A stretch of 57,276 bases of DNA, filler included, from Trichosphaerium sp. ATCC 40318 (taxonomy: Eukaryota; Protista; Tubulinea): assembly GCA_038496445.1 (NCBI GenBank). It is 3 parts of 3 records of this genome, joined end to end, with 100 filler letters (N's around TTAATTAATTAA, not from the genome) between each part and the next. Parts side by side here need not be neighbours in the genome. Positions count along the whole stretch, not along the records: positions 1 to 19,844 come from JALMLS010000026.1; 2 more parts are not named here. The stretch is one strand, 5' to 3'. Below the pieces are notes generated by a model. The model made no database searches. It had not been told where the DNA came from and was given only the letters and a program-made list of their open reading frames with translations. Below, one piece after another: positions 1-19,844 of this stretch; the stretch's first letter is position 1, and each line of letters opens with the position of its first letter. Position numbers and translations under genes: made by a program.

Positions 1-996
1 ATACAACAAAATACCGTCTATTATTGGCACTAATCAGTAAGTTTCTAGGTTTACTTAACGCTTTGGATTTTACATATGATTTTTCGAACCGCTATGTTAG
101 CATTGAGAGAACAATTCCATCCTAGCAAACCTCAAAAACCAACCTAAAAAATGAACAATTCTTTGAGAAAGCTTCCAGAAAAAAAAAAGAAAAAGAAGGA
201 AAAGTTTGTTAGTTTATTAACTTATTGTAGGTATGAGGGCAACTTCTTTATCTACCATAGTATCGGTGCACCAAAGATATGTACGTAATACATTGTACCA
301 TTGTAAAGCTAACCATAAACACACTTCTAGTGACCTATGAAGAATACGTGGAAGTAACTGCACAAGGTTTGGGAAGACTATCTGATACCCTGGACTATAA
401 AACAGTCCTACAATGGCACGTTCTTGTTTAATCTCATTTCTTTCGCCCCTTTCTAAACAATATAAGGTACACTGATTATACAGAACAAGTTGGATACTGG
501 AGAGGTTTGGCTAAGATTGTTGGTGACGGAGGTGTTCGATGTGGTGCTCATTTTGCATCGCTTAAGATTAGTTCGTATCAAGTGAACACTCATTGGCGAT
601 ACTTATTTACACGTGTACCTAAAAGTCCTGCATCATTCCTCAACGCAACACATACTTCAGAGTGTAAGTCGGTTTGAGTCTTGCTTTTTTTTCTCTTCAT
701 AGTTTACTAGTTTGCCTAACACGTGTTTAGTGCCGTATGTATTTCAGAATCCAGATCTTTTTTCCAATGCAACCGTATTCAATGAAGATGATGTAACGGT
801 TGAGCATGCATTTGCTACTTTATGGAAGTCAATGTCTGCTTTGGCAAAACCTCAAGGTACCACTGCATCATGGGCGAGCTATGGGACAAGCCAAAAAGTT
901 CTTGAATTTAATGTACCTCTTCAAATGATTCCTCTGGACCAACAGTATTGGTCTTATTGCGATAACTGGCATCATACCCTGATATCATCACAATAG
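1..996 (+). CDS. Type-B carboxylesterase/cholinesterase-like protein, 3' part (multi-exon, 5' end outside window); inverted duplicate of 13331-15662
   Basis: Near-exact reverse complement of 13331-14326; last ORF 712..996 is identical to ORF 13331..13615. Confidence 0.85.
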
Positions 997-1345
997 CTCA
1001 GTAATAAACTGTACCTTAAACGATTCTCAATGTTCTCTGTGCTGCTGAAAACTGAGTGCGATTTGTCTAATAAAAACAATGGTACAGCTTTTCTTTTTAA
1101 ACCTCACGTGTAATTTTCCTATGATATTCCGTGATAGAAAAGGTTTTTACTAGGTACATACTATTTATGTATGCGAGAGTGAGAGTGTCCAACTGAGGAA
1201 GTCAAAGTTGGCGTGAGACGTTCTCCTAAATTAAGAGAGCTCGAACCCCAAAGAAAACAAAAAAACTGTTCTCTCCTCAAACATGAGATGCTTACAAACG
1301 TAGGGTCTAACAACAAAATAGTTTACTTGTTTGTACAAACATGGT

Positions 1346-2824
1346 TTAAATGGTCTTGTTAACTACTGCCTTGGAAAACAAGATGCGTTCATCTTGACTT
1401 AATTCAAGCAGATCAAAAGTATCTGGAGTAATCTTGCTAACTTGGAAACAAGTCAAGTTCATAATATCCCCAACTGTCTCTGCTCTTTCAGGTTTAAAAC
1501 CCAACCCCTTCAGAATTACCTTCCAACATTTGTCGAGAGTAACAACAGGCAAAGTCTCTTGAGAGAGTTCTGTCCTTGTAGTACTGGAAGGCACCTTCAT
1601 AACGAGTGAGTTTTAGAAGTTGATTTCAAAAAAAGTGGTGCTAGCGTGCATTGGTAATGTCATAATCCGAAAGGCTTAGCATTTGATCTATTACAGAATT
1701 CGTTGCTTCTAAATCTGAATCAACTTGTGGTGGTTCACAGAATGGAGCCTGTTCCAGTGTAGGATCTACAACGCTCATTAGTGTATTGTTGTTCAAACTC
1801 TATGAGCAAATTGCTATGGAGTACCGAAACCTGGGTCGTTGTTGTAGGCGGGCCGTGGAACATGATGCCTATGTAACTCGCCATCGGCAATATCTTGGCT
1901 AGAGATGGTAAGAAAAGGTAAAAAAACGCTAGCTTACCTTGTCATCTCTGGCTCCGACTCAGATTCTGATTCTTCAGCTTCGTGACCCGGACTTGTGTGC
2001 CTATGATGCTGAAGCCGTTCAAACTGGCTTCGGGTTGGTTTGAGACCTAGACAACGTTAAAAGGTATTGAGTACTAGCGCGTACATCTTTGTCAAGGGGA
2101 CCAGGTTTTCTTTGTTCTGTTGTGTTTGCTGGATGAGAAGCATACCACCAGGGTGGAAAATCTTTGATTGATATGAGAATTAATTCGTCAAATACTAAAA
2201 CGTGCCTCCTTCAATAACAGTATCAGGGCTGCTTAAGAATTCACCACAGATGTATTTCAAGTTATCTTGCCCGTTGATCCATAAATCGTCACCGAGCTGC
2301 CTCCAATAACTCTCCTCGATCTAGTTGGAGTTAAACCTTGTTAAACAAACACAAGTGCTTCTCTATTCTTTGAGCGTTTAGTTTCCTCGCTTTGTATTTA
2401 CGCTTTCTTCGAACTAGGGTTGAATAAGTACAACACTTTAGTACAAAAGGCGTATGTTTTGGTCGGTCACGTTGCAGTGATTGGTGAGCAGCTAGGGTGC
2501 CTACGTTTCCCTTAGGTTCATCCATACTCGATTACGTACCTCGATTACGAGCACGTGGTTGCTTCTCCTCTATTCCAAAACCGATACGTGGTTGTGAACT
2601 TGGTTTATAACCAAACTGGGAATGAGATCACCAGTTGGTTTTTCAGACAAAATAGTTTTTAGTTTGATTAATTTACGTTCGCAGTTGTGCTGAGGTGTTG
2701 TTGAGGTTGTTCTTGTTGGTTTAGAATGACCAGAATTAGGTTTAAGCGAACAAAAACTACGAAGTATCGCACATTGGTTGTACGTTGGTAACATTGAAAA
2801 TACAGACGATACTGAGCGTTTCAT
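1346..2824 (-). pseudogene. Cassette-family gene A (MKRS leader, NLS-like segment, acidic linker, SAM-like C-terminus); frameshifted twin of gene E
   Basis: Leader ORF 2570..2824; last exon identical to that of E. Relative to E it has a net 4-bp loss near 2610-2630, a 1-bp loss near 2021 and no second ATG. Could be a pseudogene or sequencing indels. Confidence 0.6.
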
Positions 2825-3254
2825 GAGGTTTTAAGATGAAAATATATTCATCAAAAAAGTGTGAATCGTTTTTAGAAATAATACTAACTCACTGTATTAC
2901 TCCCAGACACTCTGAAAAGTGTTTGTAACAATATCACTTTCTCGTGAATACTCATGTAGTGTAACACAAAAAATACCGTTAACTGTTTTGAGACAACACG
3001 TGATAATGGTGACTGGGAATGTGTACAACTTGTTTTTATTGAGTCGGCTCGTTTTTCTTTTTTCGGTAAACTACTCGTTACCGTACAACTCAGACTAACT
3101 CCATTATTAAAAATGGTCTGGCTATTATGCGTGTCACTACTTGAACGCCTTATTTATGATACCTATCTTCTTCGAGTACTGTAGATCAATCGGGAAGGAG
3201 TTGAATCCCAAATTTGATGGAATTTTTTTTAACATTAACTATTTTTATCACGTG
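2685..3254 (-). repeat. Constant 5' cassette, copy A
   Basis: Shares AAACCTCATGAAACGC...CAACAACACCT and upstream blocks (AAAACAAGTTGTACAC, GTACGGTAACGAGTAGTTTACCGAAAA, GATCTACA) with copies B-E. Confidence 0.9.
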
Positions 3255-3341
3255 TAGAATTCGTTTACACTCTCCGTTTTTATAACGTACAATACACTGT
3301 AGTTGTTTTGAGACCTGAACTGGCACGTGATAAAAATAGTT

Positions 3342-3810
3342 CATCCCAAAAACTAAATGTAAATAAATTCTGGTTTCGGCAATTGATAAAATAAAAAAGT
3401 ACAACTCACGAGAATATCCAGACTCGCCCGCATTAGGCTAATCGTATAATTGCAGACTGGCTCTGATATTAATAAACAACACTTAAGATACCAACATAGT
3501 ATTGATAGGTGAGTCTGGACATCTAGTGAGTACGATGAAGTATTATCGAAATAAAAAGAGACTGTTTCAAAATAAGTTGTTACATGTGTTGAGTTCAAGT
3601 GTTTAAACAGTCACCAGACAACATAATGCGATTAAGAGCTTCTAAACAGTTGTATTAGATTGTATTAATGTTGTTACACGCTCTATTTGGCATAACCAGA
3701 ATATGTTAAAATGACTACACTAATAAAACAAACTACTACATCGCAAAAGTTCCACGTACTAACTTTCGTTGTAACCAAGCTTTTTATTTTGTCACTTGTG
3801 AGTTGAAAAC
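3342..3810. promoter_or_regulatory. Spacer between divergent cassettes A and B (candidate promoter or invertible segment)
   Basis: Lies between two inverted cassette copies; reverse-complement homolog at ~10467-10957; no convincing protein. Confidence 0.4.
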
Positions 3811-4487
3811 AGAATTCGTTTACACTGTCAGTTTTTATAACGTACAATACACTATAATTGTTTTGAGACCTGAACTGGCGCGTGATAAAAACAGTTAATG
3901 TAAAAAAAACAATCTATCGAATTTGGGACTTCAACTCCTTCCCGATTGATCTACATTCGAAGGAGATAGGTAACATACACAAGGCGTACAACTAGTAACA
4001 CGTATAATATCTAGACCATTTTAAATAATGGAATTAGTCTGTAGTTGTACGGTAACGAGTAGTTTACCGAAAAAAAGAAAAACGAGCCGACTCAATAAAA
4101 ACAAGTTGTACACATTCCCAGTCACCATTATCACGTGTTGTCTCAAAATTGTTAACGGTATTTTTTGTGTTACACTACATGAGTATTTACAAGAAAGTGA
4201 TATTGTTAAAAACACATTTCAGAGCATCCGGGAGGTGAATACAGCGAGTTTGTAGTATTTTCTAAAAACACGTTTTAGTAATGATACTTTCCTTATTTGA
4301 TTGATTTCACACTTTTTTGATGAATATATTTTCATCTTAAAACCTCATGAAACGCCCAGTATCGTCTGTATTTTCAATGTTACCAACATACAACCAATGT
4401 GCGATACTTCGTAGTTTTTGTTCGCTTAAACCTAATTCTGGTCATTCTAAACCAACAAGAACAACCTCAACAACACCTCAGCACAAC
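3811..4487 (+). repeat. Constant 5' cassette, copy B
   Basis: Inverted relative to A, C and D; contains ATG 4347 of the MKRPVSSVF leader. Confidence 0.9.
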
Positions 4488-5401
4488 TGCGAACGTAACT
4501 TAATCAAACTAAAAACAATACAACCTCAACGGCACATCATGTCTGAAAAACCAACTGGTGATAGCAAACAAAGTTCTTCTTCACAACCACACATCGGCTT
4601 TGGAACAGAGGCGAGGCCTCATACCCGGAATAACCGTATGTACTCGAGCTTTACAGGTGCTAACTAAACTAGGGTCCCTTGGAGCTAGACAAGATCTACA
4701 ACGAGGTATAAAATGTACAACATTTAGTACACAGAACATTTTACTCATTTCGTTAGGTCTGCGAAAGCGTAAAGCGAATTGGCAGAACACAAAATCTAAA
4801 CTTAAGCGCCCAAGAAACCGAGAAGCTGGCGATTTAGATGTACGCACGTGTGTAATAACGTTATATAACTCCCGCAATAGCTTGAAATAGATAGATTTTT
4901 TGAAGGCCAGCCAGGTAATTGGAAAAACGGGATAGACAACTCCAAGCACGAGGCTGGCGAGCATCTATTAAAGTCAACTGAGGCTATTGAGAGAGGCGCC
5001 TCAAGTTTATTAGACGAATTATTATTAACATCAATCAAAGATACTCCTCCACAATCGCCTAAAAACGATGTGATTCAACGGGCATCCATTGTTGATCATG
5101 TGCGCCAACTCTAGTAAAAATTAGTTCTTTATATTTGTCCACTAATGTTTATGTAGGCTGCTGATGCCGAAACAACAGACATCTCTCAGCTTCCTCAAAC
5201 AAAACTTAATTCCAACCCATGTTGGATGGAGATACTGAAATATTTGGGGTTTGAAAAGGACAGAGCTACTCTAATTGGAGGAAGATGAACCGTGCAAATA
5301 TCAAGACTTGCGACATCAGTGATAGGACCTTTGAAATACTTAGTTTAAGTGCTGATGAACGTCTTATACTAATTATAGCAAAGGATGAACACACCATTTG
5401 A
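4347..5401 (+). CDS. Cassette-family gene B (leader, NLS-like, SAM-like C-terminus), ~6 exons
   Basis: Introns include 4636-4672 and GC-AG 4996-5040. Last exon reads CWMEILKYLGFEKDRATLIGG/KMNRANIKTCDISDRTFEILSLSADERLIL, with a 1-bp frameshift at ~5280 (error or lesion). Confidence 0.65.
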
Positions 5402-5649
5402 AACTTATAACCTTTACTCCATACATTTGTAGCAACCTCCAATTTGTAGCCTAGAACCTGTCTCATTGAGTTTACTTGCTTGGTTACGTGTAGCACTTGT
5501 CTTTTTCATGTTAGTTGAATAACATTCCCTTATTGGTTACGTGGTAAGAGATATGATTTGTTTTAGCAACATTTGTTCGATGAAGAACTCCCACATAGTG
5601 GTAATTAAATGTAAATAGAATGCATAGTATGCCACCAAACGACCAACGT

Positions 5650-5960
5650 AAATAATTGACAAAATAATAAGTACAACTCACTACAATATCCAGACACGTG
5701 CAAAACGCTTTATCATACTAAACCAGTAAAAGAATATAGATTTCGATATTCTAATAAGGACTGTGTTGCTATGATAGATTCTAACGACCAACTTGTAACG
5801 TTAGAACTTAAATCAACCTCGACAGTAGTAAGTGTGCTATCACTTTCACTAGTGATAATACATCAAGTAATACTGTATGTACTTTTTTCGTAAACAACAC
5901 TTTTCAGAGCGTCTGGGAGGTGAATACGGCAAGTTTGCATTATTTCTAAAAACACGTGAT
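5650..5960 (+). repeat. Degenerate relic of spacer plus cassette
   Basis: AATTGACAAAATAATAAGTACAACTCACTACAATATCCAGAC resembles 3381-3424; TTTCAGAGCGTCTGGGAGGTGAATACGGCAAGTTTG resembles 4217-4252; no leader ORF follows. Confidence 0.65.
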
Positions 5961-6552
5961 AAAGCTAAACCAGCTTCCTAAATACTTGTACAGTTTATCA
6001 AAAAAATGTTGTTAACGCTTAGATCAATCCTTTGACCACCAATAAGCAAAGAAGACAATCATGGTAGGAATGGAATACATCTGTCTCTGACATAGCTCAT
6101 GCGCAGGGCGACAGTGTTTATTTACATAATACGATCGAGATTGCAAAGAAAAAAATGTGTATGAAATAAAACGAAAAAGTTGGTAGCAAAAGGTAGTTTA
6201 CGCTAGGCGGAGTAGGTGTTGTCTGTTTGCTATCGCAGTCATTTATAGCTTAGCAATGGAAATCTAGTTGGTCTTCTTTGTTCAAACGTCGTGAAATGTA
6301 CATCATGTTTAGACTTTTGAGCGAACATGTGATAACTGACAGGTGCGGTATTTATTTGATACTTACAAGTACACAGCATTCTTAGACACGAGAATCCTGA
6401 TCCCATACCACGTCACGAAATCATAGTATACCTTGCGATCCTCAGGTGCTTACACACGTCGGTTGTTGATCGTTTTTGTACAAAAAACGCTTGTAAATAC
6501 AACGAATCCATTTGCCTTTTTTGTTACCACAATACGATATTTATTTGGACAA

Positions 6553-7901
6553 TTACAATTGTTTGTCTTGGTAGTTAACTAAGTCAGCGCGCTCTTCCAC
6601 AGTGAATCCCAGCCTTAGCATAACTTTGCCTGTCACATCCTTCAATCCAACGCACATGCGGTTCAATTTTGAGCCAAGAAGTCGTGCTCTTGGTTTTTTA
6701 AGCTTTGCTTCGAGCAAAATGCTCACCCAATCAATTTGGGTACTTGCCGTTTCATCGTCTGATTCTGAAGGATCATCTCTAGCGCATTCAAAAGAGTATT
6801 GTTGGCTTTTGTCCTCCTCAGAGGCTGTATCTATTGAACAATCACCATCACCTTTTTACTGTCAGTCTCACTCATAAAAGTTCAATGTGTACCAAAATTC
6901 GGCGATTGTGTTTCTTTGTAGCTTGTTTTGCCCCTCTCCCTTACTTCAGCTTCAGGGTATCTAAAGCCGTAAGGAAACGATTAATCAAAAAAAAAACAGT
7001 ACGCTATACTTGGACGTTGTTGAGCACATGGAGGAGCAGGAACTGGGTTCTATTTACAATTTAGCAAACGACAACAAACTTAGATTTGAGTACAATACTG
7101 TGTTGCGGTATACGCATTGTGTCATCAGTCATAAAGGTTTGGAGATCTACACCTCGATAATCTTGATTGATATTAGCAACTATTTTCAATAAAAATTTCG
7201 TACCGCCTTCGAACTGCTGTACGTAGCCCTCCTCCAGTACGTCATAGTCCCCGTATTGATCGTAACAAGCGCGCTTGAATTCTGACCTGTATGCAGCTTC
7301 TAGAATCTTTTTGAAGTTAGCCTTCTTCAAGGTAAACATGCGTACAGAGTCCCAACTTCCAGGAGAAGAACCTCTTAGACGCTTCCAAGGGTAGCCGCAT
7401 GTGGAGCCCCACTTCCGTTTGTTGTCTAAAGTTGTTTCAAGTAAGTAACTCATTTTGAAATAAAAAAAAAACTACCTATTTCTTGGCTAGTGTACTGCTG
7501 GTAATCAAACGCTTCATTATAAGATCTGTCGTGGCTCTGATGGTAACCTAAACTATTGTTAGGTTTTAAAGAATGGTTGGCTACGTACTTTGATCATGGT
7601 TATTGAGATGAGGCCTTTGTACTTCTTGGGTATCAAAGTTGATAGCTGGTTTTGAACCTACAGTACTAAACCCGGTCCCCTTTTGTTCTTCGGCCATGGG
7701 TGTACTGAGTTTTCTTTTTCGAGACTTGATTATTTTTCTTCTGTTCTTTCTCCTTTGTTTATAGGAGAGAGGTGTTGTTGAGGTTGTTCTTGTTGGTTTA
7801 GAATGACCAGAATTAGGTTTAAGCGAACAAAAACTACGAAGTATCGCACATTGGTTGTACGTTGGTAACATTGAAAATACAGACGATACTGAGCGTTTCA
7901 T
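6553..7901 (-). CDS. Cassette-family gene C (leader, NLS-like, SAM-like C-terminus), multi-exon
   Basis: Leader ORF 7581..7901; KRKW...KRLR basic cluster; family-shared intron 7162-7203; last exon DWVSILLEAKLKKPRARLLGSKLNRMCVGLKDVTGKVMLRLGFTVEERADLVNYQDKQL*. Confidence 0.7.
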
Positions 7902-8350
7902 GAGGTTTTAAGATGAAAATATATTCATCAAAAAAGTGTGAAATCAATCAAATAAGGAAAGTATCATTACTAAAACGTGGTTGAATGAAAATAATACAAA
8001 CTCACTGTATTCACCTCTCCAGACGCTCTGAAATGTGTTTTTAACAATATCACTTTCTTGTAAATACTCATGTAGTGTAACACAAAAAAATACCATTAAC
8101 TGTTTTGAGACAACACGTGATAATGGTGACTGGGAATGAGTACAACTTGATTTTATTGAGTCGGCTTGTTTTTTCTTTTTTTCGGTAAACTACTCGTTAC
8201 CGTACAACTACAGACCAACTCCGTTATTAAAAATGGCCTGACTATTATACGTGTTACTGTGTGTACGCTTTGTATATGTTACCTACCTCCTTCAAATGTA
8301 GATCAATAGGGAAGGAGTTGAAGTCCAAAATTCGATAGACTTTTTTTTTT
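7770..8350 (-). repeat. Constant 5' cassette, copy C (starts ~30 bp after the stop of gene D; no spacer)
   Basis: Direct repeat of copy D (9780-10350). Confidence 0.9.
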
Positions 8351-8380
8351 ACGAAACGTATCGTTTATTTATTGTGAAAC

Positions 8381-9908
8381 TTAGGCTTGTTGCTTACATT
8401 GATACTCGATCACTTGGGCCCTTTCTAGTACTTTGAAGCCTAAAACTGCAAGAGCTTCACCTGTTATTTCAAACAGAGTCGCGTAACTTTTATCCAATTT
8501 CCGACCTAGAATTCTAGCTCTGTCTTTAGATAACTCACAAGTTATTAGTATCTCCTCCCAATTACTACGGGAAGTGACATTGATACTGTCTTTTGTGAGG
8601 TCTTTTGTATCTTCGTCAGAAGATAGCTTAACAATAAGTAAGTACAAAGGAATCCTTGTTCAAAAAAAAAAACGAAACTGAAGGATTACACTTTGACTAT
8701 CAGAGTCCGAGCCTGAGTTATGTTCTAACTTTACGGGTTGGTCGCTAGAATCTATCAGAGCACTAGAAACGGAGTCCTTGAGAATAGAAGGGTCAAAATC
8801 TAGGTCCATATTACCTTCAGGCGAAGGATCTACGAGAAAAACGTTAGTTTATATCCTCATCAAGATCAAAAAAGTTGACCGTACCAACACTAAGATCATA
8901 AGTAACGGGATCATTCTCGTCTATATTTTCTTCAAAGTTGAGTCTCTGACGTTCACTTTCTGTAATGTCAGCGCTAAAGATCATAAGAAACAGATTACAA
9001 CAAAAGGGTACCTGGTATATTCGTCCACAAGTTGAGGTACTGGGTTGGGGACATAGCTTGGGCTACGTCGACAATGAGCCTGGAACGGTTCAAAGTAAGG
9101 TTTATCTTCATAAGCATCCTATAGAGAGTGTTAAGAGGTATAAAATACTATTGAATTGTACGTCATTTGAGGCAGTATCATGGTCCCACGTGTTATTTAG
9201 GTGATAAGGAGTGTAGAAAAACGATTTTCGACCTTTGATTGATATTAATATTAAAGCCTCAAGCAACAAACGTGCCTCCTTGGAGCCCATCCAGATTTTC
9301 TATAAGATCGCTGTATTCTAACATAATATTATCCAACCCATTGAGCCACAGGCTGTGGTTGGACAAGTCTCTGTAAGGGCTCTCTTCGGATTTGATATCT
9401 GGTTGTTCAGCAGTCTTTATAGTGCGTTTAGTTTTCTTGCGCTTTGCGCAAGTGCTATCCATGCACTTTTCAGCTTTACGCTTTCTAGGGCCTAACTAAT
9501 GAGCTATTGAATAGTTACGTCAACACAAGCGTACATTTTCTTGTATCCCTGCTTAGTGACTGTTGAGCTGCTACATCGAATCTTTGTTTAGAGGCTACAG
9601 ACAAGTTCTTATGTACCTTGAATACCAGCAAAAGGTTGCTTCTCTTCCCCTCCAAAGCTAATGCGTGGCTTTGAAGTTGACTCAGTTCCGCATGAGCCAT
9701 CACCATTTGCTTGTTTCGACATGATGTATTTTGGTTTTGGTTTTTCAAGGTTGGTTAATTTACTTTTGTAGTTGTGCTGAGGTGTTGTTGGGGTTGTTGT
9801 TGGTTTAGAATGACCAGAATTAGGTTTAAGCGAACAAAAACTACGAAGTATCGCACATTGGTTGTATGTTGGTAACATTGAAAATACAGACGATACTGAG
9901 CGTTTCAT
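8381..9908 (-). CDS. Cassette-family gene D (leader, NLS-like, acidic linker, SAM-like C-terminus), multi-exon
   Basis: Leader ORF 9609..9908; RKRK...KRKKTKR; last exon NWEEILITCELSKDRARILGRKLDKSYATLFEITGEALAVLGFKVLERAQVIEYQCKQQA*. Confidence 0.7.
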
Positions 9909-10445
9909 GAGGTTTTAAGATGAAAATATATTCATCAAAAAAGTGTGAATCAATCAAATAAGGAAAGTATCATTACTAAAACGTGGTTGAATGAAAATAA
10001 TACAAACTCACTGTATTCACCTCCCCAGACGCTCTGAAATATGTTTGTAACAATATCACTTTCTTGTGAATTCTTGTGTAGTGTAACACAAAAAATACCA
10101 TTAACTGTTTTGAGACAACACGTGATAATGGCGACAGGGAATGTGTACAACTTGATTTTATTGAGTCGGCTTGTTTTTTCTTTTTTTCGGTAAACTACTC
10201 GTTACCGTACAACTACAGACCAACTCCATTATTAAAAATGGCCTGCCTATTATACGTGTTACTGCGTGTACGGTTTGTATATGTTACCTATCTCCTTCAA
10301 ATGTAGATCAATAGGGGAGGAATTGAAGTCCAAAATTCGATAGATTTTTTTAACATTAACTATTTTTATCACGTGCCAGTTCAGGTCTCAACACAACTTG
10401 AGTGTATTGTACGTTTTAAAAACTGATAGTGTAAACGAATTCTAT
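9772..10445 (-). repeat. Constant 5' cassette, copy D
   Basis: Reverse complement of copy B (3811-4487). Confidence 0.9.
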
Positions 10446-10957
10446 ACGCCAGTTAGAGTGTAAATCAATTCTGTTTTCAACTCACAATTGACAAAATAAA
10501 AAGCTAGCTTGGGTACAACGAAAGTTAGTACGTGGAACTTTTGTGATGTAGTACAGGCAATAGTATTTGTTGTAGTTTTATTCATGTACTCATTTTAACA
10601 TATTCTGGTTATGCCAAATAGAGCATGTAACATTAATACAATATAACACAACTGTTTAGAAGCTCTTAATCGCTTTACATAGTCCGGTGACTGTTTAAAC
10701 ACTTGAACTCAACACACGTAACAACTTATTTTGAAACAGTTTCTGATATTTCGATAATACTTCATCGTACTCACTAGATGTCCAGATTCACCTATCAATA
10801 CTATGTTGGTATCTTATGTGTTGTTTATTAATATCAGAGCCAGTCTGCAATTGTACAATTAGCCTAATGCGGGCGAGTCTGGAAATTCTCGTGAGCTGTA
10901 CTTTTTTATTTTATCAATTGTCGAACCAGAATTTATTTACATGGGTAGTTTTTGGGA

Positions 10958-11597
10958 TACAATACACTCAAGTTGTGTTAAGACCTGAATTGGCACGTGA
11001 TAAAAATAGTTAATGTTAAAAAAATCTATCGAATTTTGGACTTCAACTCCTTCCCTATTGATCTACAGTACTCGAAGAAGATAGGTATCATAGATAAGGC
11101 GTTCAAGTAGTGACACGCATAATAGCCAGAGTATTTTGAATAACGGAGTTAGTCTGTAGTTGTACGGTAACGAGTAGTTTACCGAAAAAAAGAAAAAACA
11201 AGCCGACTCAATAAAAACAAGTTGTACACCTTCCCAATCGCCATTATCACGTGTTGTCTCAAAACAGTCAATGGTATTTTTTTGTGGTACACTACATGAG
11301 TATTTACAAGAAAGTGATATTGCTAAAAACATATTTCAGAGCGTCTGGGAGAACAATGAGTTTGTATTTCTATCTTCAAACACGTTTTAGTAATGAGACT
11401 TTCCTTATTTGATTGATTTCACACTTTTTTGATGAATTTATTTTCATCTTAAAACCTCATGAAACGCCCAGTATCGTCTGTATTTTCAATGTTACCAACA
11501 TACAACCAATGTGCGATACTTCGTAGTTTTTGTTCGCTTAAACCTAATTCTGGTCATTCTAAACCAACAACAACAACCTCAACAACACCTCAGCACA
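10958..11597 (+). repeat. Constant 5' cassette, copy E
   Basis: Inverted relative to D; ATG at 11459. Confidence 0.9.
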
Positions 11598-12977
11598 GCA
11601 ACAAACATAAAGTAACCAACCTTAAAAAAAGAAAACCTCAATGGCGAATCATGTCTGAAAAACCAACTGGTGATAGCTCATTCCCAACCTTTGGTTATAA
11701 ACCAAGTTCACAACCACGTATCGGTTTTGGAATAGAGGAGAAGCAACCACGTGCTCGTAATCGAGGTATGTAATCGAGTATGGACGAAGCTAAGGAAAAA
11801 CATAGGCACCCTAGCTGCTCACCAATCACTGCAACGTGACAGACCAAAACGTGCGCCTTTTCTACAAAACTGTTGTACTCATCCAACGCTAGCTCGCAGA
11901 AAGCGTAAAGCAAACGTACAAATACAAAGCGAGGAACCTAAACGCTCGAAGAATAGAGAAGTACACGTGTTTGTTTAACAAGGTTGTTTACTCCCAATTA
12001 GATCGAGGAGAGTTATTTTGGAGGCCAGCTGGGTGACGATTTATGGATCAACGGGCAAGATAACTTGAAATACATCTATGGAGAATTCTTAAGCAGCCCT
12101 GATACTGTTATTGAAGGAGGCACGTTTTAGTATTTGACGAATTAACACTCATATCAATCAAAGATTTTCCACCCTGGTGGTATGCTTCTCATCCAGCAAA
12201 CACAACAGAACAAAGAAAACCTGGTCCCCTTGACAAAGATGTACGCGCTAGTACTCAATACCTTTTAACGTTGCCTAGGTCTCAAACCAACCCGAAGCCA
12301 GTTTTGAACGGCTTCAGCATCATAGGCACACAAGTCCGGGTCACGAAGCTGAAGAATCAGAATCTGAGTCGGAGCCAGAGATGACAAGGTAAGCTAGCGT
12401 TTTTTTACCTTTTCTTACCATCTCTAGCCAAGATATTGCCGATGGCGAGTTACATAGGCATCATGTTCAACGGCCCGCCTACAACAACGACCCAGGTTTC
12501 GGTACTCCATAGTAATTTGCTCATAGAGTTTGAACAACAATACACTAATGAGCGTTGTAGATCCTACACTGGAACAGGCTCCATTCTGTGAACCACAAGT
12601 TGATTCAGATTTAGAAACAACGAATTCTGTATTAGATCAAATGCTAAGCCTTTCGGATTATGACATTACAAATGCACGCTAGCACCACTTTTTTTGAAAT
12701 CAACTTCTAAGACTCACTCGTTATGAAGGTGCCTTCCAGTACTACAAGGACAGAACTCTCTCAAGAGACTTTGCCTGTTGTTACTCTCGACAAATGTTGG
12801 AAGGTAATTCTGAAGGGGTTGGGTTTTAAACCTGAAAGAGCAGAGACAGTTGGGGATATTATGAACTTGACTTGTTTCCAAGTTAGCAAGATTACTCCAG
12901 ATACTTTTGATCTGCTTGAATTAAGTCAAGATGAACGCATCTTGTTTTCCAAGGCAGTAGTTAACAAGACCATTTAA
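11459..12977 (+). CDS. Cassette-family gene E (leader, NLS-like, acidic linker, SAM-like C-terminus), multi-exon
   Basis: Leader ORF 11459..11773; RRKRK cluster; GC-AG intron 12120-12163; EAEESESESEPE acidic stretch; last exon CWKVILKGLGFKPERAETVGDIMNLTCFQVSKITPDTFDLLELSQDERILF. Confidence 0.72.
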
Positions 12978-13330
12978 ACCATGTTTGTACAAACAAGTAA
13001 ACTATTTTGTTGTTAGACCCTACGTTTGTAAGCATCTCATGTTTGAGGAGAGAACAGTTTTTTTGTTTTCTTTGGGGGTTCGAGCTCTCTTAATTTAGGA
13101 GAACGTCTCACGCCAACTTTGACTTCCTCAGTTGGACACTCTCACTCTCGCATACATAAATAGTATGTAGTACCTAGTAAAAACCTTTTCTATCACGGAA
13201 TATCATAGGAAAATTACACGTGAGGTTTAAAAAGAAAAGCTGTACCATTGTTTTTATTAGACAAATCGCACTCAGTTTTCAGCAGCACAGAGAACATTGA
13301 GAATCGTTTAAGGTACAGTTTATTACTGAG

Positions 13331-15662
13331 CTATTGTGATGATATCAGGGTATGATGCCAGTTATCGCAATAAGACCAATACTGTTGGTCCAGAGGAATC
13401 ATTTGAAGAGGTACATTAAATTCAAGAACTTTTTGGCTTGTCCCATAGCTCGCCCATGATGCAGTGGTACCTTGAGGTTTTGCCAAAGCAGACATTGACT
13501 TCCATAAAGTAGCAAATGCATGCTCAACCGTTACATCATCTTCATTGAATACGGTTGCATTGGAAAAAAGATCTGGATTCTGAAATACATACGGCACTAA
13601 ACACGTGTTAGGCAAACTAGTAAACTATGAAGAGAAAAAAAAGCAAGACTCAAACCGACTTACACTCTGAAGTATGTGTTGCGTTGAGGAATGATGCAGG
13701 ACTTTTAGGTACACGTGTAAATAAGTATCGCCAATGAGTGTTCACTTGATACGAACTAATCTTAAGCGATGCAAAATGAGCACCACATCGAACACCTCCG
13801 TCACCAACAATCTTAGCCAAACCTCTCCAGTATCCAACTTGTTCTGTATAATCAGTGTACCTTATATTGTTTAGAAAGGGGCGAAAGAAATGAGATTAAA
13901 CAAGAACGTGCCATTGTAGGACTGTTTTATAGTCCAGGGTATCAGATAGTCTTCCCAAACCTTGTGCAGTTACTTCCACGTATTCTTCATAGGTCACTAG
14001 AAGTGTGTTTATGGTTAGCTTTACAATGGTACAATGTATTACGTACATATCTTTGGTGCACCGATACTATGGTAGATAAAGAAGTTGCCCTCATACCTAC
14101 AATAAGTTAATAAACTAACAAACTTTTCCTTCTTTTTTCTTTTTTTTTTCTGGAAGCTTTCTCAAAGAATTGTTCATTTTTTAGGTTGGTTTTTGAGGTT
14201 TGCTAGGATGGAATTGTTCTCTCAATGCTAACATAGCGGTTCGAAAAATCATATGTAAAATCCAAAGCGTTAAGTAAACCTAGAAACTTACTGATTAGTG
14301 CCAATAATAGACGGTATTTTGTTGTATTCGCCACTTTCAATGATGGCCAAAGGTTGTTTGGGCAAAGATTTACCACCTATATACGGTAAAGCCTTTTGTG
14401 TCGGATGTCCAGCCTGAACAAGATCAGACCCATTGACACTCTGCAAGCAGCTGTAGAGAGTTACTGATATAGGAACATGTCAAGTCAAGTTTCGACTCAC
14501 CTTGTTGAGTATTCTGTGCACCCAACAATGTTTGCGATTTGCTCTCCATATAAGCTTGCTTGAGTAGTGTTTAGCAGAATCCAAGGAGCAGGACTTTCCG
14601 CAATAATAGCTCTACACAATGGTGTTAAGATAACTCGTTTATGTAAGGCTGAGTTGTACTGACCTTAAAGGTGTATTGAAGTTTGATACAGTTGGCATTA
14701 ATCCTTGCATCAACACGCTCATTCCTCCTGCTGACTCTCCGAATAGAGTTATTGAAGAAGGATCTCCTCCAAAGTTTTTAATATTATCATAAACCCATTG
14801 TATAGCCATTGCTTGATCTAACAACCCAACATTCTCGTGATCAGCGTTGTCTTTGTTAAAATAAAAACCAAAGATACCAAGCCGATACCTGTTACCAAAA
14901 TAAATCCTAATCGCTCTTTGTGGCTTGAATAACAAACGTACGGGATTGTGACAATCACAGAGTTGGTGTATGCCGCAAGTTGTCCTGAGGGAAAGTCTGA
15001 AGTACCAGCATGGAGAAATGTTCCCCCATGTACTTGGCAAAGCGTTAGACAAAATAATCCATGGACATGTCCTAAAACTTTTCTTTAGCAACGTACTGAA
15101 AACGAGAACTGGAAGCATTTCTCTTTCTGATGCTGGTTCAAATACGTTCAAGTACAAGCAGTCCTCTGAGTATACTTTACCAGGTTTTTGCTCATCTTGT
15201 AAACACTGAGGTTTAAAACTGTTGCAAGAACAAGTTAGAGAATGATCAGTTGTTGTTACTGGAGAAAATATCGAAAATGGAATCGCAAAAAAAATCACGT
15301 GCTTTGATGCCTTCAAAGTTGTGGTCCATTCTTGAGGCTTCTGAGGCGACTTGAAGCGTAGTGATCCTACTGGAGGCGAAGCGAAAGGTATTCCTAGCAA
15401 AATATATCACGTGTTTGCGGTATATCATGTAATACCTTTAAAATACGCGTACGGAAGTCCCCCTGTAGAATCTACGCCTTATATAAGTTCTAGTTGTTAC
15501 AAAGACTGTGTATGTACCAGTGAAGCCTTCGACAGGACCATACGTTGTTTTAACGATCAAAGACGATCCTTGTGGCACTTCATTGGCCGTGTTGTATGTC
15601 GCCTTGGTAGAAGACACTACGAGAATCAAAATTGTTAACGTAAGCACTTGACGATGATTCAT
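13331..15662 (-). CDS. Secreted type-B carboxylesterase (cholinesterase/lipase family), multi-exon
   Basis: Signal peptide [19 protein letters not shown]; motifs [38 protein letters not shown] and [18 protein letters not shown] (catalytic Ser). Confidence 0.93.
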
Positions 15663-17306
15663 TGCTAAGTTGGTGAACGCGGTGTTGTATTTCAGCAATG
15701 CCAAGATCGAAAAATGTCCACTACATTTGTCGGTAAAATCATATTCCGCTTCCTGTTTCAAAGCAAACAACACAGTTCACAAAAACCGTCTGTTTGGGAT
15801 TATGTTTATCCGCTTTATGCATTTCTTCGTAAAACGTTTATGATTTGAAACTACCTTTGTATCCACCAAACATACTTGCGTGACTCCTTTTTCCAAAGTA
15901 CTTGGATTCATTGCCACTCAACGTGTCAAAGCCATAAAAGCCAAATGCGAAAATGTTAAACAAACTTTAGCTTAGTGATTGATGACTAACTACTGTAGTT
16001 TTTTGTTGGCATGTGGTGAAACAACTTGGCTTTTTGATCTTAAAAACAAAAAAGTACGCCATAAAAGCCAGCTCAAGCTGTTCAAAACTACGCCTAACAT
16101 CTACCAAAAATGATGGTTATACTTTCAAAAAAGACATCGAGGCTAAAAACAACCTTGAGTCATTCTACCACTCACGTGATTGTACAAGCAGATATTATAA
16201 TATAACTTTTCGGAGATGTTGGATAAAGTTGTGGGCGCCCATGTAACGGAACATTGTAATTTCCCAATACATTTAACATTTTATTTGGATAGTCCTTGCT
16301 TTTGTAATTGGTTACTTCAAACAGCTTTTGGCGAAACTCGGAGAATAGACAGTAATTCTTGGCGAATTCGGGTCTTTGGGCAAGTTGTGGTAATGTATCT
16401 GTACTTTAGAAACTTTCTTGGTGTAATTCTCAAAACTCACAGTGGCAAAGGTGGCAGGGAAGAGATTTTCTACTAAATCTGAAGCAAAATCACTCAAGTG
16501 GATTTTGATACCTAGTCACATATTAACCTGTGCTGCCATACCCACCAATGGATGACATTTTGTGAGCGAAGGTCGGGTTCTTGCCCCGAGCGAAGCGATG
16601 GGCCCGACCGAAAACGAACAGTGCTATATTAGCTTGTATTCGCTGTCCCATACTTGAATAGTGTTACACCAAAACTAGGAATACAAAGAATCCACTTTTT
16701 TGTGGAAAATGTGTCGTCTGCACGTTTGATGTTGCAAACGGTTTGCAGAATAAATAGACTGACAAAGGTGTAATCATCGAGGAACAAGAGCATGAAAACA
16801 TTAGTAATACAATTACAGACTTTGGATTGCAGCCATTGCTTAACCTTGAGCAACTAAGACTTGTCTTGGTTTAAAAAGATTACAAATGTTTGAAATACTT
16901 AAAATCTCTGAAAAGTATCGCATTAATGTTTTCTAAAGTTACAAGAGGCTGTTAAGTCAATGGGTAATCAATATATTGACATTATGGAATACACTTATTG
17001 CGATATAAGTGTGCTTCTAGACAAGCATCGTCCAATAAAAAAGCAAGCTTCAGAAGCCACCAGTGTCTTTATATTAGTGTGTTTTGCACCCGTTCTTGAT
17101 CAACAGCAAGAACGTTGACTATTAATGCTGTGATACAACCCACAAACAATGCAATGTGTAATTGATCCAGCTCATTACTAATGAGGAAACTGATACCGTA
17201 GATTGCAGCTTCACAAGCAGGAGAACACAACATCATCAGCTGTCAAGCGAAACAAAAAAAAAGGCGCCTTAGCAAAGAAGCCTTAAGTCAGAATCTCGCT
17301 CTCAAG

Positions 17307-19844
17307 ATGCTAAAGCCTGCATGTCGCACTAATTTGGCCATAATATGTTTGGTTGCGTTTTTACACCTTATAGCCGCTCGAGATACAATCTTAGATGATT
17401 TTCTTGATACAGAATTGCCTGGTTAGTATTTGATGTAGCGTAATAATATCACGTGATCTCAAATAAGCTTCGGAAATAGTTTTTTTTCAAAAACAACAAT
17501 AAAGTTGTTTTTGTTTTAATTTACTTTTATAAAAGGACTAAGGAGGCCAGATGGTCCATTCGAAGTTACAACAACAGCTGTAGTTGGAACCATATTTGGT
17601 GGAGAGCGAGACATGCGTTTATTACCATCAATGGGTACGAGGCCCGTAACAGCTATGGTGAGAACAGGAGATCTATTCTTTGAGAACGGCGCGAGGACAG
17701 CAGGTGCTATTGAAATTGTATACGATGGCGCTGATGGTGATGCTCTTAATGACGCTGAGGGACTGAACGCTGATTTATTTAATAACGGAGGTACGCAGTT
17801 AATAAGTATATGTTTGTAGAAAAAAATCACGTGACAACGTAAATACACGTGTAAACGCCTCAATTAGGTAATTTTTTTGACAATTAACTAAGCGCTAATT
17901 AGACGCTTTTTTGGTGGTTGTTCGGGCTAATGATTTGGCTGTAACGTTCGATTTCGATGTCACAACAATAGCTGAAGGGTTAATACAAAGTTCTACACGC
18001 TTAGAGATGGTTGCTCCTGGTATAGCGGAAGTTATAATTCCGTTTGTACCAAATCTCATCACTGCTTATCGAAACGTTACTCAATTAGTGTTCCGAGTGG
18101 ATATGGACCCAGGTACACTTTATAACCTTCGCTGGTTCTTATTTTCTATCAAATGCCTTAAAATGCTTGTGTGGAGCTGTGCAGTTCTCAGAGTAGATTT
18201 TACGCTTTTCGTTCTTACAGAACCTCGCTTAGCGAAATCCACTCTAAGACTCTTGTTTCCACTTTTATTTTAGTAGTTTCTTCACCTATGGCGCCTTGAA
18301 AAATCAAACCTGTATAATTTCTTCGAGTAGTTAACAAGAATGCACATAATCAATTATTGAAATATTAACTGGTTTTTTTTTTTGACTGTAGAGGTTGATG
18401 TGACGATTTCTCAATTCTGTGTTGTACCAACTATCGAAGCTCTTTTATTTACAGATGTTATATCAGATACGGCACCAACAGGGCCATCAGTTGGTAAGTT
18501 ATTTTAAGATCAAAACTCGTGACGGTTTTTTTCTTACTTTCTGTATCAAAAGGCGATCTATTGCTTGTTGAGGTTGTCGTCTTTAATCCAATTTCTGTTC
18601 CTAATCTTGGTGTTGATGACGTTGCTTTCTTTCATCCACCTTTCGATACATCTATTGCTGTTTTAGAAACAGGATCTGTAATCACTTCAAAGGCACGTGC
18701 TCAGAAGAAATTCCAACAAGAAAAAAAAACTGAAACGAAACCTTCTCATTTTCACCAATAGGGAGAAATCAAGCTTGGAAATGCACCTTCGGATGATCAA
18801 ATATGGATCGCTATTGGACCTATGGCTGATGGAGAGGATGTTACGATAACATTCCATCTTCGATTGATAGCACCTGGGCAACTCTCATTACAAGGAGAGT
18901 TATTCACAACACCTTTTGATTCAGTACCCGTTTTGACTAGTAGTTTCAACAGAGAAGGTGATTTAAGGTGTACTTGTCCGAACGCAACAATAGTTGATGT
19001 TGTTGAAATAGACCAATGTGTAATATCTGAACGTTTTTCAGCGTACGCGTTTAAGAAAATATCACGTGTTCACAAAAGTTCTCAAATGCTTTTTTTTTTC
19101 GGTTTTTTTCTGGGATTTCTTGGTTCTCTAACAGCTTTTTTAAGTGATGATTTGAATCGCAGAGGTACATGGATACTAGAAAATCATCCTAGAGGAGATT
19201 TAGGTACAATCTATGTTTGTGACTAAGCAACAAATGAAACACCTTTTGAAACTTTTTTCGTTCAAAGAATTAAACGTTTTATTAGCTCCACCTGAATACT
19301 GTCTTCGATTGGATGCACTTCCTTTATTCCCTACAGACATGGTACTTATATATTTCATAATAAGATCCTAATAGAAGTCTCTATGCTGATGTAACGGTGT
19401 TTTTGTAGCAAGTTGTTTTTTCATGTGAAGATAACAACCTTCTTATATCTTACGATGGTATTGATACTATTCGTATTTTCGGTACAGTTCGTGGATTCCC
19501 AATAAATGATCCTTCCAACTTCGCAAAGTATGAGGTAGACTTCACGTACAGGTACTTACAAATTAAAATACCATGCAAAAACGACTTAGCAGTCTCATTC
19601 TCTTTTTTTTCTTCAAAATAGGTTTGTTCGAAGGGTTCCAAGTACTGGCATTGCAACAGCTGTGGAGAATCCAAATGAGCGTATTTCGCGTGGTACTATA
19701 AAGTACGACCTCACCTTAGTGATAAACTCGAGTAATCACGCAATAGGGTATCTTCCACTGGTCAAGAGTTTGAGTTGACTGTAGCTCGATCTTGTACGTC
19801 AGCCGCTTCTATGTTGTTTTGTTCTGACTATATGACTTTTAGCT
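17307..19844 (+). CDS. Secreted beta-rich surface protein (GGERD/YDG-DG domain plus DUF11-like Ig domain), multi-exon, probably cut by the gap
   Basis: Signal peptide MLKPACRTNLAIICLVAFLHLIAA; IFGGERDM...IVYDGADGD..GLNADL; VGDLLLVEVVVFN...GSVITSKG...IGPMADGEDVTITF resembles DUF11. Confidence 0.7.

What the first reader, a model, noticed from the sequence alone, without database searches (positions are those of the whole stretch)
1346..12977. Constant-leader / variable-body cassette locus: five diverged orphan genes behind one near-identical 5' module, in both orientations
Seen: genes A(-), B(+), C(-), D(-), E(+) each start with an almost identical ~550-680 bp module (upstream DNA plus MKR[S/P]VSSVFSMLPTYNQCAILRSFCSLKPNSGHSKP..TTP). 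Identity collapses within a few codons after ...ACACCT, and the bodies of B, C, D and E are only remotely similar, although they share intron positions and a C-terminal domain. Old paralogs therefore carry a young, homogenised 5' end. A/B and D/E diverge from a shared spacer, while C has no spacer. Known analogue: the Campylobacter fetus sapA locus, where ~600-bp shared 5' regions allow inversions that place different variable genes behind one promoter. Inference: recombination between inverted copies (A/B, D/E, B/C, B/D, A/E, C/E) would flip spacers or swap bodies, giving a shufflon-like switch in a protist, with C as a possible silent copy. The alternative is concerted evolution of a shared promoter and leader with no switching.
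Basis: partly seen in the sequence, partly recalled or inferred. Interest (0 to 1): 0.9.

Follow-up and report, generated by a model that had tools for sequence, protein, structure and literature searches.

The report
SAM-gene cluster sharing one homogenised promoter-leader
In a probable amoeba, four old and very different SAM-domain genes share an almost identical promoter and protein start because copies keep overwriting each other inside an inverted duplication; a bacterial-style flip switch is possible but unsupported.

Summary
The shared 5' module is real: five copies, with a 178-bp core around the first ATG 97-99% identical and about 450 bp upstream about 89-95% identical. B, C, D and E bodies are only 21-44% identical. 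Three corrections. (1) A is not a fifth diverged gene but an inverted, frameshifted copy of E: 1-4565 is an inverted repeat of 9696-14327. (2) The proteins are not structural orphans: they end in a SAM fold, with nearest relatives in amoebae (Trichosphaerium). (3) The abrupt collapse after ACACCT holds only for C. The modules are mosaic (A has a B-type leader tail on an E-type body), and B and D occupy equivalent positions yet are 21-28% identical. So the module has been a conversion and rearrangement junction. A transcriptome run shows spliced E-allele mRNA and no D contigs. I found no recombinase, no single expression site and no orientation isomer, and no DNA reads were available. The outer 1.6 kb of the repeat may be one flank seen twice (in-vivo flip, amplification chimera or assembler extension). 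Best reading: concerted evolution of a promoter plus leader (BEX/WEX/GASP-like) inside an inverted repeat. A regulated inversion switch is about 13% likely.

The parts
1..4565 (.). left arm of large inverted repeat (cut by the piece edge inside a carboxylesterase gene)
   Evidence: (91% over 4.7 kb)
9696..14327 (.). right arm of the inverted repeat
1..996 (+). 3' half of carboxylesterase gene, copy without substitutions relative to the right-arm copy
13331..15662 (-). intact, transcribed and spliced carboxylesterase gene (flank)
   Evidence: Pfam PF00135; 1695-nt transcript contig
1346..2824 (-). gene A: frameshifted near-copy of E with a B-type leader tail; second Met absent; probable recent pseudogene, some indels may be read errors
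2692..3254 (-). module copy A (31-bp deletion at about -74..-44)
3251..3352 (.). about 80-100 bp of the upstream module inverted between CACGTG-containing inverted repeats, only in A
3360..3780 (.). A/B spacer core, highly similar to the D/E spacer core and in the same orientation relative to A/E
3811..4479 (+). module copy B
4347..5401 (+). gene B, 6 exons, one frame break near 5286 in the SAM exon (read with X)
5654..5957 (+). patchwork of remnants: spacer piece 5654-5698, D-exon piece 5767-5821, module piece 5890-5957
6553..7901 (-). gene C, 7 exons, 362 aa, intact model
7769..8352 (-). module copy C, truncated upstream, about 30 bp from D's stop
8381..9908 (-). gene D, 8 exons, 398 aa, intact model; no transcript contig in run X1
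9779..10443 (-). module copy D
10443..10928 (.). D/E spacer core
10928..11591 (+). module copy E; core 11414-11591 holds ATG1 and the 44-codon constant leader
11459..12977 (+). gene E, 9 exons, 386 aa; transcribed; introns 12120-12163 (GC-AG), 12241-12278 and 12502-12560 confirmed by RNA
12729..12977 (+). last exon of E: SAM-like domain (homologous exons: A 1346-1594, B 5157-5401, C 6553-6851, D 8381-8626)

Best explanation
An old local family of intron-rich amoebozoan genes (basic RKRK patch, disordered middle, C-terminal SAM fold) arranged as head-to-head pairs inside a multi-kb inverted duplication. Recurrent ectopic gene conversion between nearby copies keeps the promoter and the first 44 codons nearly identical, peaking at the first ATG, while the bodies are too diverged to convert. 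Shown: the identity gradient, the mosaicism, the recombinant A, the boundary of the duplication lying in the B/D module, and expression of E. Inferred: that selection favours one shared regulatory and N-terminal targeting unit (a basic, S/T-rich, acid-free 62-68 aa extension before a second Met, possibly giving long and short isoforms), and that occasional crossovers in the module produced the duplications, body swaps and remnants as evolutionary events rather than a regulated switch.
For: Identity peaks at -45..+132 (97-99%) and falls both ways. The nearest partner changes along the module: A=E at -455..-345 (95%), A=B at -345..-225 (97%), C=D at -120..-45 (99%), A=B at +148..+184 (97% vs 75% to E), then A=E 100%. 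313 of 666 informative site pairs are four-gamete incompatible against 9% (maximum 34%) simulated without recombination. The ATG1-to-second-Met distance is a multiple of 3 and stop-free in B, C, D and E while the other frames have 2-6 stops. Each gene has its own full upstream module. Known precedent: PMC1274310.
Against: With strong mutational hotspots the incompatibility test is only marginal (p about 0.05). The leader was not covered by RNA, so its transcription and translation are unproven; its amphipathicity is not significant (p 0.19). It does not explain why only E was seen in RNA, nor the substitution-free outer 1.6 kb.
Confidence: 0.6

Rival explanations
1. Assembly or amplification product. 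The outer part of the left arm is the single-copy right flank seen twice (template-switch chimera inside A/E, or assembler-extended repeat), or the two arms are divergent haplotypes joined head to head, with A/E and B/D as alleles. The shared module among C, D and E remains real; only the palindrome and the number of copies change.
For: No substitutions in 1-1611, introns included, versus 9 in the next 700 bp (p 2e-5). 11 of 12 indels are losses in the left arm (p 0.006), many in homopolymers. The arm runs off the piece inside a gene. Assembler-extended repeats are described in PMC6692504 and palindromic WGA chimeras in papers. The Trichosphaerium draft, a candidate source (GC 37.7% vs 38.0% here), used amplified DNA.
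Against: The inner arms differ by real-looking changes: 23/354 intron vs 14/948 exon substitutions (p 6e-6), B-shared alleles and a 13-bp deletion. A plain fold-back chimera therefore cannot explain them. No overlap that would let an assembler fuse two haplotypes was found at 5960-6550. The source genome is not identified.
Confidence: 0.2
2. Regulated inversion switch. Crossovers between inverted modules or between the long arms flip the B-C-D centre or the spacers, changing which body is expressed, either through a unique enhancer or promoter or through a position effect from beyond the left edge (yeast FF1-like).
For: The architecture resembles vpma/sap cassettes and FF1 (inverted repeat around non-equivalent genes, a truncated gene in the repeat). 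Both orientations in one sample would produce exactly a substitution-free outer arm. Only E-allele transcripts were seen; E plus carboxylesterase pieces account for 0.076 of the run's 0.08 word share.
Against: All copies carry the whole upstream module; no recombinase was found among the flanking ORFs tested; spacers are not flipped between arms; modules are about 10% diverged and long, unlike site-specific sites. E depth is only about 4, so the others may simply be below assembly threshold. SAM proteins without signal or transmembrane segments are not typical variable surface antigens.
Confidence: 0.13
3. wtf-like selfish toxin-antidote family: a long isoform with the constant leader (holding an L-P-T-Y, PY-type motif) neutralises a short isoform starting at the second Met through SAM-SAM co-assembly, with diverged SAM domains giving specificity.
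For: Two in-frame starts, a constant N-terminal extension with a Leu-Pro-x-Tyr motif as defined in PMC10721834, ectopic conversion and pseudogene copies.
Against: No sequence or fold relation to Wtf, which are multi-pass membrane proteins; one PY-like motif can arise by chance; no drive or toxicity data; alternative starts not shown.
Confidence: 0.04
4. The module is the terminal inverted repeat of a transposon (Mutator-like, with inward promoters) or a dispersed repeat.
For: B and C or D are convergent between inverted modules.
Against: No fixed outer end (homology runs on through the spacers, C is truncated); no transposase; same position relative to the second Met in four old paralogs; no copy elsewhere in the piece, in metagenome or viral contigs.
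Confidence: 0.03

Closest known systems
Mammalian BEX/WEX/GASP cluster (PMC1274310)
   Same: Clustered genes with highly diverged coding regions and a 5' element kept uniform by recurrent gene conversion, giving chimaeric genes.
   Different: There the element is a 5' UTR motif; here it is about 450 bp of upstream DNA plus 44 probably coding codons, in head-to-head pairs inside a 4.5-kb inverted repeat in a protist.
Mycoplasma agalactiae vpma / M. bovis vsp (PMC2268961); Campylobacter fetus sap (own knowledge)
   Same: Constant 5' region and leader, diverged bodies, mixed orientations.
   Different: Those have one unique promoter and surface proteins, and vpma has an adjacent Xer1 tyrosine recombinase (sap is RecA-dependent, from memory). 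None of these was found here.
Yeast flip/flop mating-type switching, FF1 (PMC6692504, PMC5720833)
   Same: A multi-kb inverted repeat containing a truncated gene flanks non-equivalent genes.
   Different: No MAT-like transcription factors; the inner arms are diverged by up to about 10%; no known centromere or telomere; inversion not shown.
SAM domain, Sla1 SHD2 / SAM_4 type
   Same: Model aligns to 3idw with Z 8.9, rmsd 1.7 over 61 residues, followed by many SAM domains; Atlas TM about 0.7.
   Different: Only 12% identity, below Pfam thresholds; sequence relatives are just two amoebal proteins (C2-tail or RCC1 repeats plus SAM).

Membership tests
Concertedly evolving 5' element on diverged paralogs (BEX/WEX/GASP kind) | 5' element far more similar than coding bodies | tested here: met
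   97-99% core vs 21-44% protein identity
Concertedly evolving 5' element on diverged paralogs (BEX/WEX/GASP kind) | mosaic history showing gene conversion | tested here: met
   clearest for A (B-type tail, E-type body); marginal under a hotspot model
Concertedly evolving 5' element on diverged paralogs (BEX/WEX/GASP kind) | paralogs closer than orthologs of a sister species | not testable with these tools
   no related locus found
vpma/sap-type invertible cassette switch | constant 5' cassette before variable bodies in both orientations | tested here: met
vpma/sap-type invertible cassette switch | single unique promoter or expression site | tested here: inconclusive
   each copy has the full module; 5' ends not covered by RNA; only E detected
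vpma/sap-type invertible cassette switch | linked site-specific recombinase | tested here: not met
   none among flanking ORF pieces scanned; the piece ends at the left arm and not all exons were scanned
vpma/sap-type invertible cassette switch | orientation isomers within a clone | not testable with these tools
   only an RNA contig run holds the locus
FF1 flip/flop locus | inverted repeat flanking non-equivalent genes | tested here: met
   B vs D/C in the centre
FF1 flip/flop locus | MAT-type regulators in the invertible region | tested here: not met
   SAM-fold proteins, no homeodomain or HMG hit
FF1 flip/flop locus | silencing centromere or telomere beside one arm | not testable with these tools
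   piece ends at position 1
SAM domain | compact 4-5 helix SAM fold | tested here: met
   pLDDT 78 model
wtf drivers | multi-transmembrane toxin/antidote from alternative starts | tested here: not met
   no hydrophobic segments evident in the models, no Pfam hit; alternative starts untested

The most novel reading that the evidence does not exclude
An amoebozoan invertible locus in which crossovers within the shared promoter-leader modules or the long arms reversibly change which SAM-domain paralog is expressed: a eukaryotic shufflon or flip/flop, perhaps setting cell identity or self-recognition.
Probability: 0.13. Interest if true: 0.88.

Novelty: new variant of a known kind. Interest (0 to 1): 0.48.

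Why it matters
It is an unusually clean case of a promoter plus N-terminal leader being homogenised across paralogs under 45% identical, with a sharp conversion peak at the start codon and a recombinant copy caught in the same locus. If the centre also inverts within clones, it would be a programmed DNA switch in Amoebozoa, a group for which I know none (own knowledge), and it is cheaply testable by long reads or junction PCR.

Tried and rejected
Rfam: nothing at gathering threshold, one chance hit at E=5; the leader RNA does not fold unusually (z -1), so an ncRNA explanation for the core was rejected. Pfam gave no significant hit on family exons. Leader exon: no homologs. Metagenome and viral scans for the module DNA or exons were blank. 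C's middle exon had no Atlas hit. The sap paper search returned no primary paper, so sap details rest on own knowledge. One of the pieces used in the word-share sum (12279-12316) was inferred from the joint table.
Full report
Observation. A 20-mer of the module occurs exactly five times in the stated orientations. Alignment of the five copies gives a core from -45 to +132 around the first ATG that is 97-99% identical, upstream DNA back to about -460 that is about 89-95% identical overall, and a fall after ACACCTC that is abrupt only for C (47-58%) and stepwise for A, B, D and E (72-97%, then 59-70% for most pairs). A is therefore a duplicate of E, the two spacers are duplicates, and B and D sit at equivalent positions.

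Genes. Short GT-AG and GC-AG introns (37-65 nt) give intact models for E (386 aa), D (398 aa) and C (362 aa). B has one frame break in its last exon, read with X. A has several frameshifts, lacks the second Met and has a non-canonical donor. Bodies start at a second in-frame Met 62-68 codons downstream and are 21-44% identical. The distance between the two starts is a multiple of three and stop-free in B, C, D and E, while the other frames are closed, so the leader is probably coding (inference). It is basic, S/T-rich and almost free of acidic residues, like a mitochondrial presequence, but its helical moment is not significant. The last exon folds as a SAM domain: pLDDT 78, best match Sla1 SHD2 at Z 8.9 followed by many SAM domains. 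The only sequence relatives among 1.84 billion representatives are two proteins: one from Trichosphaerium sp. ATCC 40318 and one from an MMETSP transcriptome. The host is probably an amoebozoan; the Trichosphaerium draft (PMC10521059; GC 37.7%, intron-rich, amplified DNA) is a candidate, not an identification.

Expression. The one public run holding the locus consists of spliced transcript contigs. It confirms three E introns, including a GC-AG one, and the flanking carboxylesterase. The contigs match E, not A, at six diagnostic sites. Nothing lay on D, the spacer or the module. E plus carboxylesterase explain 0.076 of the 0.08 word share, whereas C or D would each add about 0.09-0.10. Depth on E is about 4, so this shows the presence of E, not the silence of the others.

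Recombination. The closest partner changes along the module, and A carries a B-type leader tail (97% to B, 75% to E) directly before an E-type exon (100%). Of informative site pairs, 47% are incompatible with one tree, against 9% expected without recombination; this is marginal only under a strong hotspot model. B and D are flanked by near-identical spacers yet are 21-28% identical, so the edge of the duplicated or homogenised block lies in the module. Fragments of spacer, of a D exon and of the module lie between B and C, and A has a small inversion upstream. The module has thus served as a conversion and rearrangement substrate. Nothing shows that this is frequent, reversible or regulated: each copy has the whole upstream module, the two spacers have the same orientation relative to A/E, and no recombinase was found.

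Status of the inverted repeat. The inner arms diverged under selection (intron substitutions 23/354, exon 14/948), so they are real separate sequences. The outer 1.6 kb has no substitution, runs off the piece inside the carboxylesterase gene, and 11 of 12 indels are losses in the left arm. It may be a recently homogenised arm, or one flank seen twice through an in-vivo flip, an amplification chimera or assembler extension, as described for yeast flip/flop loci (PMC6692504). These cannot be told apart here, and some of A's and B's frame breaks may be read errors.

Comparison. It works like the BEX/WEX/GASP cluster, where conversion keeps a 5' element uniform among diverged genes (PMC1274310), with the difference that promoter and coding leader are both included. 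It looks like vpma (PMC2268961) and sap, but their unique promoter and vpma's linked recombinase were not found. It resembles FF1 geometry but lacks MAT-type genes. A wtf-like reading rests on one PY-type motif (PMC10721834) and is weak.

Verdict. The feature is real and striking. It is best explained as concerted evolution of a promoter-leader unit in an inverted-repeat cluster of SAM genes (0.6); artefact of arm structure 0.2; regulated switch 0.13. New variant of a known kind; interest 0.48.

Noticed in passing
window 1-19844: CACGTG occurs 30 times, often in introns; 8 in the unique right flank against 0.9 expected. Several junctions (3249, 3324, 5695, 5953) fall on it.
   Followed up: partly
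window 12120-12163, 9233-9275, 4996-5040, 7162-7203: One homologous intron (GC-AG in B, D, E; GT-AG in C) is 66-78% identical among paralogs, more than the flanking exons (48-63%). In B it is 45 nt and in frame.
   Followed up: partly
window 3251-3352: Small inversion in A's upstream DNA between CACGTG-containing inverted repeats, template-switch-like.
   Followed up: partly
window 5654-5957: Patchwork of spacer, D-exon and module fragments downstream of B, probably a decayed extra cassette.
   Followed up: partly
window 11489-11500 and equivalents: The leader holds an L-P-T-Y (PY-type) motif and, further on, an R-S-F-C-S segment resembling a mitochondrial processing site; a short uORF begins at -29.
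   Followed up: partly
window 4047-4075 and equivalents: Invariant 34-bp block with a small hairpin followed by an A-run in all five modules.
   Followed up: no
window 15900-17400 (-) and 17500-19844 (+): Two further intron-rich genes, apparently a helical-repeat protein and a beta-rich extracellular-type protein; no Pfam hit on the pieces scanned.
   Followed up: partly
P0001, P0002 (L001): Related SAM domains end a Trichosphaerium protein and an RCC1-repeat protein from an MMETSP transcriptome, suggesting an amoebal SHD2-like SAM subfamily missing from Pfam.
   Followed up: partly
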